Positions 19,346 to 59,770 of a DNA stretch of 64,000 nucleotides are shown piece after piece. The stretch comes from Euprymna scolopes. Its lineage: Eukaryota. The DNA lies in the NCBI GenBank assembly GCA_053919585.1, contig CM132786.1; one strand, 5' to 3'. The position numbers were made by a program, and so were the translations under genes. The notes beneath the pieces were generated by a model, which did no database searches, was not told the DNA's origin, and worked only from the letters and a program-made list of their open reading frames with translations. Position 1 is the stretch's first letter. Each line of letters begins with the position of its first letter.

Positions 19346-19417
19346 GAAATATAGCTCAATGGTAGAGCATTCGGCTATAAATCGAATGATCCCGTGTTCA
19401 AATCTGGATTTACTTCA
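19346..19417 (+). pseudogene. tRNA-like sequence inside a probable Helitron (~19066-19540)
   Basis: D arm GCTC(AATGGTA)GAGC, anticodon arm TTCGG(CTATAAA)TCGAA, GTTCAAATC B-box; T and acceptor stems broken. Confidence 0.55.
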
Positions 19418-21363: not shown

Positions 21364-22130
21364 ATACTACTGCATTCTTCGTAAAATTTGTATAGAAAAG
21401 TTGTGTTTGATCTTGATATAAGTCTTTGTTTTTAATTGCATACCTGTTTAGCGATGAAAAGAAATCGATAAGCATGTCATAAGATTTATTGCAAATATTA
21501 CTCATTAAACTCTTTTGAACTTTCTGTCTGTAACATATCAGTTTCTATTAAAACCAAATACATTTTCTGCTTTTTACGATATACTTTCGGCTTGTTTTAT
21601 TTTTAAAAAATAGAGGTCTACTCTCGAAATTATCAAATACGTTATACCATTATACCGGCCCGGTTATATTAAATGGTAAATTCATATTTACTGAGTTATA
21701 TGTGGCAGATCTTTTGAAAAATGAATAAACGTACGAAGATTTGTAATTTAATTGCTGCCTTCGAGTATCTGTTTTTGTTCATACGTCAGGCCAAATCACT
21801 ATCCCGGCATTCTATATTGCTATCAGCCTTATTAAACACTCACATTTCAGTTTTATATATAACCGAGACGATCTATTGATCTCAATCTCTGAAAGTAATG
21901 TTTTATTTTTGTATTTTTAGCCATTTATTTATTGCATACTTTCTCATATATATTCATACATATATACCAGGATATTTTAAGAGGCGGCAAAATTAAATTT
22001 TTAGAAAAATCGTAAAACAGATTGCTATTAGACAAATATGGACTTCATATTATTTGATTAATTGGAATTTTTATTGACATCAGTAATTTGTAATATTCAT
22101 CCATTTATTTGTTGCGGACTATTATCCTTC

Positions 22131-22400
22131 GGGGCCCGTGGCGCAGTGGATAGAGACGTTGAATCTCTGCGGTTCCAAGTAAGTATTGTCTGAAGATAGC
22201 CGTTTCAATCCTACCCAAAGCCGGTCAGAGGCTTAGTTGGGCAAAACGTAGTGAAACAGCAACAACAACTATGAAAGCAGTAATTGCCGAGGATGCAATT
22301 AGGAGATTCGAAGTTCCTATTCTGTCGTGGTCAACCACATGACGACGGCCAGGGGAATAGTTAGCCGAAACATCGTGAAACAATAACTAATAATCAGGAT
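22131..22400 (+). mobile_element. tRNA-headed, hammerhead-tailed SINE-like element
   Basis: Starts GGGGCCCGTGGCGCAGTGG (A box); B-box-like GTTTCAATCC; decayed HHR at 22336-22377; inverted copy of the family tail at ~22025-22130; homologues at 48720-49330. Confidence 0.6.
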
Positions 22401-47856: not shown

Positions 47857-48323
47857 TCTATATTATAAACCTTATACTTATGTATGTATGTATGTATGTA
47901 TGTATGTATATCTGCTTAAAAATTTCGACAGACGCGGCGGATTTTCACGAGATTGGTATCTTCTTGAAGCTTGACCACTCGGACGACAAACATCAAACAA
48001 TTGGCTAAAGACATTCATTTCTTCACCCTTAACTGGGCACTTTCTACAGGGAGGGGTTGCTCTTTTTCGCCCATATTTTCGAAAGTCATCCCATCTTTTC
48101 GATTGTCTAGCCTTAATTTAAACATACATCACTTTTTGTTTTGCGATGGGCGCAACAGCAAAGACGTCACGTTTTTTATGTTCTTTTCCTCCTTTGCGGT
48201 ATAGGTTCAAGCATGCCTGCCTGCCTACTATCACATTTTTTTTTGCTCAACACACACCTAAAACAGCCGGGCAACGCCGGGCAACGCCGGGCAACGCCGG
48301 GCAACGCCGGGCACCCAGGCTAG
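47857..48323 (+). mobile_element. Non-autonomous Helitron, family B
   Basis: A|TC start, CTAG|T end, no TSD; joined flanks restore a sequence seen uninterrupted (inverted) at ~40795-40821. Confidence 0.88.
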
Positions 48324-55391: not shown

Positions 55392-56576
55392 TCTATAAAT
55401 ATAAAAGCGAAAATGTATGTATGTATGTGTGTTCGCCTTTTCTGTGTGTCTACAAAAGGCTTCTTTCAGAGAAGCGGTCGCTCGGTTCACAACTTTTTAA
55501 AACTTTTTATATCACATACAAATCTTAATATCTCACACTTAACAACGAAGCTCGCCTGTCTATTTAATTTGGTCGATTTTGGGAAGATAAATATCCAATA
55601 TTTGTCGCTCGCTGCATGTGGGTTAGTCTTCTTCCTATAACATCTGGGGGGGGGCGAGGAAAAAAGCGTTCAGCAGTAAATGAAATCCAGCAGTCAAACT
55701 GACCTCATTAACTCATTAAAACGAGCACCTGCTAAATCCAACTAATTAAATAAATTCAAACATTCTTCCGTAAGCATGTCGTTGTGGGTCAATCGTTAGC
55801 GTCGCACTTTTTTTTTCACAACTTTGCCTCAACGGTTCGGGTTCGATCCTCATACTTACATTTTTTAAACCCCCCCCAACCACCACCACCAAACACCCGG
55901 GCAACGCCGGAGTCTTTTTCCTATAACATCTTGGGGGTGGAAAAAAAGCGTTCAGCAATAAATGAATACTATCCCGCAGTTGACCTCATTGTCTCATTAG
56001 AACGGGCACCTGCTAAATCCAACTAATTAAATAAATTCAAACGTGTTTCCGTTAGCATCTCGCGGTGGAGCAATGGTTAACATCGCACTTTTTTTTCACA
56101 CTTTAATTTACAACTTTGCCTCAACGGTTCGGGTTCAATCCTCATACTTACTTTTTTTTTTAATCCCCCGTCACACCTCCAAACACCCGGGCAACGCCGG
56201 GTACCCCTCGCTAGTTTATAAATATAAAAGCGAAAATGTAAAAAGATAAATATTCAATATTTGTCGCTCGCTGCATGTGGGTTAGTCTTCTTCCTATAAC
56301 ATCTGGGGGGGGGGCGAGGAAAAAAGCGTTCAGCAGTAAATGAAATCCAGCAGTCAAACTGGCCTCATTAACTCATTAAAACGAGCACCTGCTAAATCCA
56401 ACTAATTAAATAAATTCAGACGCTTTTCCGTAATCCTGTCGTTCTGGGCCAATCGTTAACGTCGCACGTCCTTTTTTTTTTCACATCTTTGCCTCAACGG
56501 TTCGGGTTCGATCCTCATACTTACTTTTTTTTAATCCCCCCCAAACATCCGGGCAACGCCGGGTACCCCTCGCTAG
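55392..56576 (+). mobile_element. Helitron family F tandem array with tRNA-like cores
   Basis: A|TC start; three ~290-bp modules each ending in CCGGGCAACGCCGG; CTAG at 56211-56214 and 56573-56576; second head TTTATAAATATAAAAGCG at 56215. Confidence 0.8.
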
Positions 56577-56648
56577 TACTTTCATAAATCAGAGTCCATT
56601 TTTTGTTGGCTGTTTTTGAACCCAATCAACAACGGGTACTTTTGCTAG

Positions 56649-57081
56649 TCTAATTTATAAAACTCATATTGTCTGTCTGTTTGTCTTTCTGTCTTTCTTT
56701 CTTCATATTTTCAACATCTATTTCGACTTAAACTAAAAATTGCAGAGTGATTGGACTTTTATGTGCCGTTCTTTTATTGGTCTTTTAGCCGGTTAAAATA
56801 GTTTTTGAGGGGTGGGGTCAAAACAGGTCAAAATTGAAAAAAAAAACGTTATTCATTTTGTACATTCATCTTATGATTATTTTAATTAGTTCGAATGCGT
56901 GTCACGTTGGTAGAATTAAAACGTCATCAGGTTTGTATGCTACAATTTTGTTTTCGGTTTCAATTCTAGCTAATGGCACACACATCTTTTTTTTTAAAAT
57001 CATGACGATAATAATATATACAAAATCTGGACGAATTCAAATATCATATTTAAGCGTATTTTACGCCTGGGCAAAGCCTGG
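56649..57081 (+). mobile_element. Non-autonomous Helitron, family A (3' tip in gap)
   Basis: TC start directly after a CTAG; (TGTC)n; CCTGGGCAAAGCCTGG just before the gap. Confidence 0.7.
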
Positions 57082-58430
57082 NNNNNNNNNNNNNNNNNNN
57101 NNNNNNNNNNNNNNNNNNNNNNNNNNNNNNNNNNNNNNNNNNNNNNNNNNNNNNNNNNNNNNNNNNNNNNNNNNNNNNNNNNNNNNNNNNNNNNNNNNNN
57201 NNNNNNNNNNATAATGCAAAAGACTGATTTTCGATTGATACTACATTAGTTTCATCTTTCATCGATATATTCTGTTCTCAGGAAATCAGCCGGCAGGGCT
57301 AAAGATATCAAATATACCCGATCTATATTTTGAGAGTGTGACACGCTATAGTATTTCTCAGGAAATCTTATTTTGTTTTATATTTTTTCTACTTTACAAG
57401 AACTAATCTTTGCCAAACTTTTCCGATGTCATCATTTGTATTGTTAACAAATTTTGTTTCGTTTTTATGTGTCACCTGAAAATCGCCAACGAAATCCGTT
57501 TCATAACCGCGTAAAAAGTTATAGATTTAGATTCGAAATGCAGAGTTTGAAAGATATTCAATTTGGGTTAAATCCCTGAAATTCAGTATCCAAAGTTGAG
57601 ACGTCGGAAGTGAACTCGGCTTTGTTAAATATTGAACGGAATCAGTAAACATGAAATGAAATACAAACCCACATGAAACTTTTTTCATAGAAACGTTTTA
57701 TGAAAAAAATTTTAAAGTAACTTTTTGGTGTGATAACGCCGAAATCACTGATAAAAACTTCCACGCATTTTTATGACAAAATTCTGTGAAACAGTCTCGT
57801 GATAGACTTATTCTAAGAACTTAAAAAATGCAAGTTTATTTTTATTGTTTATCTGTTTTAAATATCTATCTAGTATTTAATATATTATTTCAAAAAGAAA
57901 TTTATATAAATGTAAATAATAAAAATTCTCATGAGATTTTTTTGCTTCGTGATAACGCACGTAACTAATGAAATTATCACTCTTTATTTATTGTTTTGTG
58001 ATAACACAATTGTCAAAACAAAAACATAATAGAAATGTAAACATTAAAAGTTGACATTTTTATTGATTTATGATAACACAAGAAGAAGGGTTTAAACTAG
58101 AATACACTTTGAAGTAAACTATGTGTTCGTATTTCGTTTCATATTAGTGACTTTCGTTCCGTTCCATATTTAAGCTAACTCTGTCCCTTTCTTACGTCTT
58201 TACTTTATATACTGAAATTTTTTAATTTGACCTCAATTTAATCCTCTGTAGAAGTTAATTTCCGTTTATCTTTCCAGTACTCCATTCCAATCCCCTAATT
58301 ATCTACCGCAGGCTCCACAACTATCCACATAATGTTATTGGAAATTCAGTAAATAATCAATTCGAGATGATTGGTTCACAAATATGAACATTCTAATTTT
58401 GTACAGTTTTATGTATCTTATTATTTAATA

Positions 58431-58999
58431 CTAGCGGCTGCACCGCGTCAGTACACACAACGCAGAGTCAAACACAAAATCGAGTACACTCAACATCAAG
58501 TACACTCAACATCGTCTTATCACCAACGCTTAACTTGTGAACTCGGAGTATGCACAAATCAAAATCACTGAAAAAAACAAAAATACCTTAACTAAGGGTA
58601 AGGATAATGAGTAAACGTTAGATAAAATGATGGTGAAAATTATTACGAACTTGCCAGGATTCGAACCTGGAATCTTCTGATCCGTAGTCAGACGCGTTAT
58701 CCATTGCGCCACAAATCCCGTATACAGTAAGTGTCAAATTCCGTTGACATGGGTAGGTAACTTTTTCGACTTGCACGAAGCGGCCCATAAAACTCTAATT
58801 TCGGGCTTTTGTGTGACTCGGCGTTGTTTGTTACCAACCATACATAGATAAGGACAATCTAGGGACTCACACCTTTCAAGGAAATAAAAAAAATTTTAAT
58901 TCGGTGCATCCGTTCGAAAGTTTTATTAGTAGATATATACTCACATGAATAAATAAATAAATAAATAAACATTTAGAATTTTATTATTAATAGTATAGA
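58431..58999 (-). mobile_element. 569-bp non-autonomous Helitron containing a tRNA gene
   Basis: Minus strand A|TCTATACTATTAATAATAAAA + (TTTA)n start; CTGCGT...ACGCGG hairpin 8 nt before CTAG|T; single copy in window. Confidence 0.65.
58646..58718 (-). tRNA. tRNA-Arg(ACG)
   Basis: 73 nt GGATTTGTGGCGCAATGGATAACGCGTCTGACTACGGATCAGAAGATTCCAGGTTCGAATCCTGGCAAGTTCG; full cloverleaf, anticodon at 58683-58685, acceptor stem pairs with two G-U, TTTT 6 nt downstream. Confidence 0.93.
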
Positions 59000-59167
59000 T
59001 GCCCTTATATCATATCTGTAGTAATATATTTTTCTACATAGTTACCAGAATTCGCAATGCACCGTTGCCAGCGATGGAGGAGGTAACACTGCGTGGACGT
59101 ACAGAGGGCGGTCTGTTACTTCAACTCAGTAATAACATATGTAATATTAAAGAATATTAATAATAAA

Positions 59168-59770
59168 CTACCGGGATTGGGGCGCCGGCTTTGCCCGGTA
59201 GTAAAATACGCTTAAATATGATATTTCTATTTGTCCGGAGTTCGTATACATTATTATAGTGTCGGGATTTAAAAAGAAGGGGGGGATTTGGGTATCATCA
59301 GCTAGAATCGAAACCGAAACCGTAACATTTAAAGTTATATTAAAAAAACTATTTTAACCGGCTAAACACTCATAAAAGAACAATAGTGAGTTTAATGAAT
59401 ACCATATATAAACGGCTATATGTCTGTCTGTCGGTTTGTCTGCCTGTCTCCATATTTTAAAACTCTATCTCCCTCTGAAACTAAAATCGTATACCGGTGC
59501 TAGCGGCCTCAAATAGTTGGATTTTTTTACGGGCTGTTTTTTTATGGGTCTTTAGCCAGTTAAAATTCTTATTAGAGGTCAAAAATGGGTTATAATTGAA
59601 AAAATCGTTAAACGTTCCGTACATTTATCTTATGACATTTTTTTTTTAATTTTTAATCAGCCTATGTGTATCACGTTGGTACAGTGTGAACGTAACCAGA
59701 TTTCAATGCTGAAGTTTCGCTTTCGATTCACGCTGATGACACCTAAATACGGTTTTTTTTTCACTTTTGA
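59168..59770. mobile_element. Two oppositely oriented Helitron family A fragments
   Basis: ~59168-59385 (minus, 3' part) and ~59405-59770 (plus, 5' part). Confidence 0.55.

What the first reader, a model, noticed from the sequence alone, without database searches (positions are those of the whole stretch)
58431..58999. An apparently intact tRNA-Arg(ACG) sits inside a compact Helitron
Seen: the only well-formed tRNA in the window lies mid-way in, and co-oriented with, a 569-bp unit that has Helitron ends (A|TCTATACTATTAAT..., subterminal hairpin, CTAG|T, no TSD). The tRNA keeps all stems, A and B boxes and a T4 tract; its acceptor stem (GGATTTG/CAAGTTC) is AU/GU-rich but still pairs. Known: Helitrons capture host sequence, and tRNA genes carry internal Pol III promoters. 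Inference: a rolling-circle element may be dispersing a tRNA gene, either changing Arg(ACG) dosage or using the Pol III unit for its own benefit.
Basis: partly seen in the sequence, partly recalled or inferred. Interest (0 to 1): 0.78.

Follow-up and report, generated by a model that had tools for sequence, protein, structure and literature searches.

The report
tRNA-Arg gene inside a Helitron-like unit
A complete arginine tRNA gene lies inside a 569-base unit whose front end is a real rolling-circle transposon (Helitron) end, so the transposon probably picked up the gene, but nothing here could show that it has spread.

Summary
A full-length tRNA-Arg(ACG) lies on the minus strand at 58646-58718 (ARAGORN; Rfam tRNA, 60.3 bits). 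It sits at positions 282-354 of a co-oriented unit, 58431-58999, that reads A|TCTATACTATTAAT ... GCGGTGCAGCCGCTAG|T with no target duplication.

New here: the first ~115 nt of the unit run in the same order as the 5' region of a multi-copy Helitron family in the same window (for example 47857-48323). The shared features are the TCTATAYTAT terminus, a tetranucleotide microsatellite and the block TAAAAMTTTCGAM. The 5' end is therefore a real Helitron left end.

The rest of the body and the 3' end are unrelated to that family. The 3' hairpin is weak (4 GC pairs, no more stable than shuffles). Still, CTAG|T next to an all-GC hairpin is rare in this AT-rich DNA: about 0.01-0.05 by chance per 570 nt.

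Best reading (0.5): a chimeric non-autonomous Helitron that carried off a host tRNA gene by running past its own 3' end.

Dispersal is untested. The neighbouring Helitron family has no real tRNA. Moderate interest.

The parts
58431..58999 (-). Whole candidate unit (569 bp): A|TC ... CTAG|T, no target-site duplication
   Evidence: Read directly. No second copy in the window (blastn).
58885..58999 (-). Helitron left terminal region (unit positions 1-115), similar to the window's multi-copy family
   Evidence: Global and local alignment to 47857-, 30746- and 60745rc copies: z 4.0-6.8 against shuffles for positions 1-115, and none for 116-281.
58990..58999 (-). 5' terminus TCTATACTAT (family copy 47857: TCTATATTAT)
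58948..58969 (-). (TTTA)n microsatellite, at the position where the family carries (ATGT)n
58913..58925 (-). Conserved post-microsatellite block TAAAACTTTCGAA
   Evidence: The 13-mer TAAAAMTTTCGAM has 5 exact matches in the window. Four follow a tetranucleotide microsatellite in Helitron 5' regions. Nine matches at <=1 mismatch against 1.7 expected.
58646..58718 (-). tRNA-Arg(ACG) gene, complete cloverleaf, A and B boxes
   Evidence: ARAGORN. Rfam RF00005 at 60.3 bits, model positions 1-71 of 71.
58636..58639 (-). T4 tract 7 nt after the tRNA, a Pol III terminator-like site. Further T runs at 58624-58627, 58571-58577 and 58580-58584.
   Evidence: Read directly. Terminator function is inferred.
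58434..58446 (-). 3' subterminal palindrome GCGG-TGCAG-CCGC, overlapping CTAG by one base
   Evidence: Weak by DNA folding.
58431..58434 (-). 3' terminal CTAG, followed by T at 58430
47857..48323 (+). Reference copy of the window's multi-copy Helitron family: A|TCTATATTAT..(ATGT)n..TAAAAATTTCGAC ... (CCGGGCAACG)n CCGGGCACCCAGGCTAG|T
   Evidence: Its 3' terminus is shared with >=120 metagenome contigs.

Best explanation
The unit is a chimeric non-autonomous Helitron. Its left end (about 115 nt) comes from a Helitron lineage that is abundant in this mollusc genome. The remaining ~450 nt are former host DNA that includes a complete, probably functional tRNA-Arg(ACG) gene with its own Pol III terminator.

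The most likely origin is 3' transduction. A parent element sat upstream of a host tRNA gene. The transposase ran past or lacked the normal 3' terminator and stopped at a fortuitous GC hairpin plus CTAG further on. That created a new element with a de novo 3' end and the tRNA gene as cargo.

Shown: the tRNA, the end motifs and the left-end similarity. Inferred: the capture route, whether this locus is a transposed copy rather than the donor site, and any activity. Copy number is unknown and probably low.
For: The tRNA is complete.

The left end runs in the same order as the family copies at 47857, 30746 and 60745rc: terminus, tetranucleotide microsatellite, 13-mer block. Similarity stops after about position 115, and the 3' end differs from the family's conserved terminus. 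This is the pattern expected for a de novo 3' end.

CTAGT with an all-GC hairpin is rare outside known Helitron ends. It is the only such site on this strand between 57.2 and 59.0 kb.

The flanks are A and T with no duplication.

Experiments with Helraiser show that the left end is essential, the right end is dispensable, and bypass of the 3' end transduces flanking DNA and creates new 3' ends (PMC4778049).
Against: There is only one copy in 64 kb, and no copy was found elsewhere. Those outside blanks are uninformative, because the species itself is not in the collections (best hit to the window's RT ORF is 86%).

The 3' hairpin is only 4 bp, abuts CTAG instead of lying ~10 nt upstream, and folds no better than shuffles.

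No empty site was available. In a scan of hundreds of windows of a Helitron-rich genome, a host tRNA gene lying behind a truncated left end with a chance CTAGT is not negligible (my rough estimate: 0.15-0.5 such cases expected).
Confidence: 0.5

Rival explanations
1. This is the native host tRNA-Arg(ACG) gene. A 3'-truncated Helitron fragment (left end only) happens to lie about 170-280 bp upstream, and the hairpin plus CTAG|T downstream is a coincidence. The 569-bp span was never a mobile unit.
For: The unit is single-copy in the window. The 3' hairpin is thermodynamically insignificant. The body from 116 on shows no similarity to any Helitron. The region is crowded with Helitron pieces, including fragments. 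The tRNA looks like a well-kept gene with its own terminator.
Against: CTAGT plus an all-GC hairpin on the right strand within 570 nt has a chance of about 0.01-0.05. A and T flank the unit exactly as a Helitron insertion requires.
Confidence: 0.3
2. One reading: a multi-copy Helitron family in which the tRNA gene is an integral, maintained module. The family spreads functional tRNA-Arg genes and/or exploits Pol III/TFIIIC binding for its own benefit.
For: Helitron identity as above. The tRNA shows no decay in the cloverleaf, boxes or terminator. First-stage notes on other windows of this genome repeatedly mention tRNA-like cassettes in Helitron-like units; these notes are unchecked.
Against: No second copy was seen anywhere. 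The neighbouring Helitron family's 'tRNA-like' modules do not match the tRNA covariance model even at E<=10. About 480 kb of Helitron-bearing contigs from another host hold no tRNA gene except one dubious call. The low-coverage runs hold only 0.13-0.16 of the words of 58000-59400. The tRNA plus the known repeat at 59187-59334 could account for that share, which argues against a young high-copy family. This last point is an inference, because word positions are not given.
Confidence: 0.12
3. The tRNA arrived secondarily in an existing Helitron, either as the head of a tRNA-derived SINE, as a retro-copy, or inside a small inverted-repeat element (arms 58807-58831 and 58453-58479).
For: tRNA-Arg-headed SINEs are reported in this genome. 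A 25-27-nt imperfect inverted repeat brackets the tRNA.
Against: A T4 terminator 7 nt after the tRNA would stop a SINE transcript. There is no CCA, poly(A) or target duplication. The unit shows no similarity to the tRNA-headed elements of the window at 10103-10528 and 22025-22400. The inverted repeat is not significant against shuffles (score 33 against 24 +/- 4.3, maximum 38) and has no flanking duplication.
Confidence: 0.05

Closest known systems
Helitron gene capture by 3'-end bypass (Helraiser / HelibatN families; PMC4778049)
   Same: A family-type left end, an unrelated captured body, a de novo 3' end ending in CTAG, and insertion between A and T without duplication.
   Different: The cargo here is a complete Pol III tRNA gene rather than a Pol II promoter or exon fragment. 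Amplification of the chimera is not shown.
Arabidopsis thaliana chromosome 5 tRNA-Cys cluster overlapping ATREP5/HELITRONY1D annotations (PMC10701932)
   Same: A tRNA gene, co-oriented, inside ~0.4-kb units annotated as Helitron-derived, with CTAG motifs. [quoted passage not shown]
   Different: That case is a local tandem array for which Helitron-finding programs gave no reliable prediction. Here there is a single unit with an identifiable left end and both canonical junctions, in an animal.
HINE / DINE-1-like non-autonomous Helentrons of molluscs and insects (PMC4067079, PMC7492417)
   Same: A short non-coding unit with a tetranucleotide microsatellite shortly after the 5' end and a 3' palindrome. 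These are abundant in molluscs.
   Different: HINEs insert at TT and carry 11-15-bp subterminal inverted repeats. This unit and its window relatives have TC...CTAG ends between A and T, and I found no subterminal inverted repeats.
tRNA-derived SINEs
   Same: An internal Pol III promoter (A and B boxes) inside a short repeat-like unit.
   Different: A full tRNA with a terminator directly behind it, no LINE-type tail, no target duplication, and rolling-circle-type ends.

Membership tests
Canonical Helitron (non-autonomous) | 5' end TC and 3' end CTRR | tested here: met
   TC at 58999-58998 and CTAG at 58434-58431, minus strand.
Canonical Helitron (non-autonomous) | Insertion between A and T without target-site duplication | tested here: inconclusive
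   The flanks are A (59000) and T (58430) with no repeat. No empty site could be obtained to prove an insertion.
Canonical Helitron (non-autonomous) | 16-20-nt palindrome about 10-12 nt from the 3' end | tested here: inconclusive
   A 13-nt palindrome (4 GC pairs, 5-nt loop) abuts CTAG. The DNA fold is -4.4 kcal/mol, z +0.3. Such a site is nevertheless rare next to CTAGT.
Canonical Helitron (non-autonomous) | Terminal sequence shared with other members of a Helitron family | tested here: met
   This holds for the left end only. Positions 1-115 run in the same order as copies at 47857, 30746 and 60745rc. The right end is not shared.
Canonical Helitron (non-autonomous) | Several copies in the genome that share both ends, with homology stopping at the ends | not testable with these tools
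No eukaryote genome collection was on hand. Other look-ups were blank.
Functional cytosolic tRNA gene | Complete cloverleaf, A and B boxes, anticodon loop, downstream T-run terminator | tested here: met
   (60.3 bits, full model). Boxes and T4 read.
Functional cytosolic tRNA gene | Expression, CCA addition, aminoacylation | not testable with these tools
The runs found are kept as contigs only.
HINE / Helentron-associated element | Insertion at TT; 11-15-bp subterminal inverted repeats near both ends | tested here: not met
   The flanks are A and T. The best internal inverted repeat starts at unit position 169, far from the 5' end, and is not significant.
HINE / Helentron-associated element | Microsatellite in the left flank and a 3' palindrome | tested here: met
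   (TTTA)n at 58969-58948; palindrome at 58446-58434.
tRNA-derived SINE | tRNA-like head without terminator, LINE-related tail, target-site duplication | tested here: not met
   T4 lies 7 nt after the tRNA, and there is no tail repeat and no duplication. No similarity to the window's tRNA-headed elements.

The most novel reading that the evidence does not exclude
A Helitron lineage in this mollusc keeps an intact tRNA-Arg(ACG) gene as a standing module and has copied it to many sites. Part of the host's tRNA-Arg supply would then be transposon-borne. The element could also gain from TFIIIC/Pol III occupancy, for example through open, silencing-resistant chromatin.
Probability: 0.12. Interest if true: 0.7.

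Novelty: new variant of a known kind. Interest (0 to 1): 0.38.

Why it matters
Helitrons are known to pick up Pol II promoters and exon fragments. Capture of a complete Pol III gene has barely been documented. [quoted passage not shown]

If this unit has copies, it would be a clean animal example of a rolling-circle transposon moving a working tRNA gene. That would bear on how tRNA gene families expand in molluscs and on whether transposons exploit Pol III factors. As it stands, it is one locus with good structural but no population evidence.

Tried and rejected
- Later queries used 58431-58652 and 58714/58719-58999.
- The BLAST database had the stretch masked.
- Rfam searches stopped short of it.
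- The self-alignment of the element in a script was a local computation, not a search.

**2. Getting copies through spurious ORFs.**
- Exact look-ups of six ORFs were blank.
- The word search with the 53-aa open frame at 58737-58895 was blank.
- Exact look-ups of the window's transposase and RT ORFs were also blank.
- These blanks are uninformative, because the species itself is not in the collection. The best hit to the window's RT ORF is 86%, on a contig of a related mollusc that holds no copy of the unit.

**3. Exact-pattern scans.**
- The 3' terminus gave nothing in metagenome contigs.
- In viral contigs it gave one hit, inside GC-rich phage DNA, which I judge to be chance.
- The left-end block gave nothing in genome or viral contigs.

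**4. Inverted repeat 58807-58831 / 58453-58479 as MITE or subTIR.** It is not significant and has no target duplication.

**5. 'tRNA-like modules' of the neighbouring family as support for an integral tRNA.** The tRNA covariance model finds nothing there.

**6. Similarity of the body (116-281) or the 3' part to the window family.** None found.

**7. Findings index by sequence.** Blank.

Full report
**Observation**

On the minus strand ARAGORN calls one tRNA in the window, tRNA-Arg with anticodon ACG, at 58646-58718. The Rfam tRNA model matches the same span end to end at 60.3 bits against a gathering score of 29. All seven acceptor pairs are standard or G-U. The only flagged pair is the innermost D-stem pair.

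Read directly, the gene has:
- an A box, TGGCGCAATGG;
- a perfect B box, GGTTCGAATCC;
- a T4 tract 7 nt after the discriminator base (58639-58636), with more T runs further on.

The acceptor stem GGATTTG/CAAGTTC has 2 G-C, 3 A-U and 2 G-U pairs. From my memory of the vertebrate tRNA-Arg(ACG), which no tool checked here, the body is of the conserved metazoan type. By the same recollection, the acceptor differences are mostly paired changes. That is the pattern of a maintained gene, not of a decaying copy.

GCGG-TGCAG-CCGC overlapping CTAG (58434-58431)|T(58430), with no flanking duplication. The tRNA is co-oriented at unit positions 282-354.

Two corrections apply. Rfam also reports a weak tRNA-like match at 19346-19417 (33.4 bits). 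The 3' hairpin is only a 4-bp stem whose DNA fold is no better than shuffles.

**Context**

Earlier notes of this scan place the window in a large, Helitron-rich mollusc genome. The window itself confirms the Helitron richness.

A scan for CTRR+T preceded by a GC hairpin gives 10 sites against about 0.9 in shuffles. Six of them (23663, 31188, 31626, 48323, 56214, 56576) share the terminus CCCGGGCAACGCCGGG-(8-10 nt)-CTAG|T.

A complete copy lies at 47857-48323. It reads A|TCTATATTATAAACC..(ATGT)n..TATATCTGCTTAAAAATTTCGAC ... CCGGGCACCCAGGCTAG|T. Three window copies of this family are 80-83% identical over about 280 nt.

The family's last 28-30 nt recur almost letter for letter at the ends of at least 120 metagenome contigs of about 40% GC. 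Those contigs have unrelated bodies. This confirms the sequence as a true, transposase-recognised terminus.

**The 5' end of the candidate is a Helitron left end**

The candidate has no second copy in the window. Its first ~115 nt nevertheless run in the same order as the family's 5' region:
- the terminus TCTATA[C/T]TAT;
- a tetranucleotide microsatellite 25-30 nt in, (TTTA)n against (ATGT)n;
- the block TAAAA[A/C]TTTCGA[A/C], followed by a similar GC-rich stretch.

That 13-mer has five exact matches in 64 kb. Four of them follow a tetranucleotide microsatellite in Helitron 5' regions. At one mismatch or fewer there are nine matches against 1.7 expected.

Alignment scores for positions 1-115 exceed shuffles at z 4.0-6.8. 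For the part after the microsatellite alone, z is 3.3-3.9 for two of the three copies. Positions 116-281 and the whole 3' part show no similarity to the family.

**The 3' end**

It is unlike the family terminus. The palindrome abuts CTAG instead of lying ~10 nt upstream, and it is weak.

CTAGT sites are still sparse, at one per ~1,700 nt per strand. Only 12 of 73 carry a hairpin scoring as well as this one. Seven of those 12 are recognised Helitron ends, two lie in a TA microsatellite, two are other sites and one is the candidate.

The chance of such a site on the right strand within 570 nt of the left end is therefore about 0.01-0.02, or about 0.05 with looser criteria. Those criteria were chosen after seeing the site. 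The scan has also looked at hundreds of windows of this genome. I therefore treat the 3' end as probable, not proven.

**Mechanism**

A family-type left end, an unrelated body and a novel 3' end are what 3'-end bypass produces. With Helraiser the left end is essential and the right end is dispensable. Read-through transduces flanking DNA and creates de novo 3' ends, and natural Helibat copies show the same (PMC4778049).

I therefore read the unit as a chimeric non-autonomous Helitron. Its cargo is a stretch of former host DNA containing a tRNA-Arg(ACG) gene with its own terminator.

The terminator directly behind the tRNA argues against a SINE head or retro-copy. So do the absence of CCA, poly(A) and target duplication, and the lack of similarity to the window's tRNA-headed elements. 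The internal inverted repeat around the tRNA is not significant.

**What could not be shown**

The key test is copy number and whether copies share both ends and the tRNA. I could not run it.
From then on I worked beside those places and sent none of their letters to any search tool.
- Exact ORF look-ups were blank.
- A protein word search with an open frame of the unit was blank.
- Pattern scans of metagenome, viral and prokaryote collections were blank or gave a chance hit.

These blanks say little, because the species is not in those collections. The best relative of the window's RT ORF is 86% identical and sits on a contig of a related mollusc that holds no copy of the unit.

One indirect hint comes from the runs. 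Low-coverage DNA runs of the likely source species hold only 0.13-0.16 of the words of 58000-59400. The tRNA plus the known repeat at 59187-59334 could account for that share. This argues against a young high-copy family, but word positions are not reported, so it remains an inference.

**Is a tRNA a regular part of Helitrons here?**

First-stage notes on this genome say so repeatedly. For the family next door the claim fails a direct test. The tRNA covariance model finds nothing in 55650-56600 even at E<=10, and nothing elsewhere in 1-58600 apart from 19346-19417.

About 480 kb of Helitron-bearing contigs from another host hold no tRNA gene apart from one dubious call. The intact tRNA in this unit is thus an exception, not a family trait.

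**Comparison with the known**

- The unit works like a Helitron gene capture.
- By its junctions and left end it fits a canonical Helitron. The palindrome criterion is inconclusive and the multi-copy criterion is untested.
- It is not a HINE/Helentron. The flanks are A and T, not TT, and there are no subterminal inverted repeats (PMC4067079, PMC7492417). It does share the microsatellite trait.
- The nearest published parallel for the cargo is the Arabidopsis tRNA-Cys cluster in Helitron-annotated repeats. Its authors say a Helitron origin would be the first captured non-coding RNA (PMC10701932).

**Verdict**

| Item | Result |
|---|---|
| Observation | confirmed |
| Best explanation: chimeric Helitron with a transduced tRNA gene | 0.5 |
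| Rival: native tRNA gene behind a truncated Helitron fragment | 0.3 |
| Rival: multi-copy tRNA-dispersing family | 0.12 |
| Rival: secondary arrival of the tRNA | 0.05 |
| Novelty | new variant of a known kind |
| Interest | 0.38 |

Noticed in passing
window 56185-56214, 56547-56576, 48294-48323, 31159-31188, 31597-31626; loci L002-L121: The last 28-30 nt of the window's abundant Helitron family (CCCGGGCAACGCCGGGTACCCC..GCTAG|T) recur at about 96% identity at the 3' ends of at least 120 JGI metagenome contigs. Most are from Ga0268261; others are from Ga0209423, Ga0209738, JGI20169J29049 and JGI20171J29575. These contigs have about 40% GC, so they are host DNA of some other animal, and their bodies are unrelated. 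This points to either very deep conservation of the terminus or horizontal transfer.
   Followed up: partly
window 48258-48310: In the copy at 47857-48323 the 10-mer CCGGGCAACG, which forms the hairpin arm plus loop, is repeated in tandem about four times just before the 3' end. This looks like a small seed of the terminus-derived satellites noted elsewhere in this genome.
   Followed up: no
window 55650-56600: Two to three head-to-tail Helitron units carry A-box-like and B-box-like motifs (for example GGTTCGGGTTCGATCC). They do not match the Rfam tRNA model even at E<=10, so the 'tRNA-like cassette' noted by first readers is at best a badly decayed remnant here.
   Followed up: yes
window 19346-19417 (+): A second, weak tRNA-like match (Rfam 33.4 bits, just above the gathering score of 29; not called by ARAGORN). 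It lies downstream of a (TA)n tract, and I saw no Helitron end nearby.
   Followed up: partly
window 59164-59334 (-), also 187-363 and 56952-57082: Another repeat family has a Helitron-style 3' hairpin, CCGGGCAAAGCCGG. Its end at 59164 reads GGTAG|T and the copy ending at 363 reads CTAG|T. It lies only 164 bp beyond the candidate's 5' end, so minus-strand Helitron-type elements are stacked here.
   Followed up: no
window 36320-36670: A roughly 350-bp tandem array of a 22-nt unit, TTTGAAAACTTTGGAATTTTAG.
   Followed up: no
L122 (ENA ERZ22157276 contig ctg7733l, 21 kb): A metagenome-assembly contig with 34% GC shares several repeat families with the window at 70-84% identity, including the RT element at 11.6-13.2 kb (84% over 1.56 kb). 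It is evidently host DNA of a related mollusc.
   Followed up: partly
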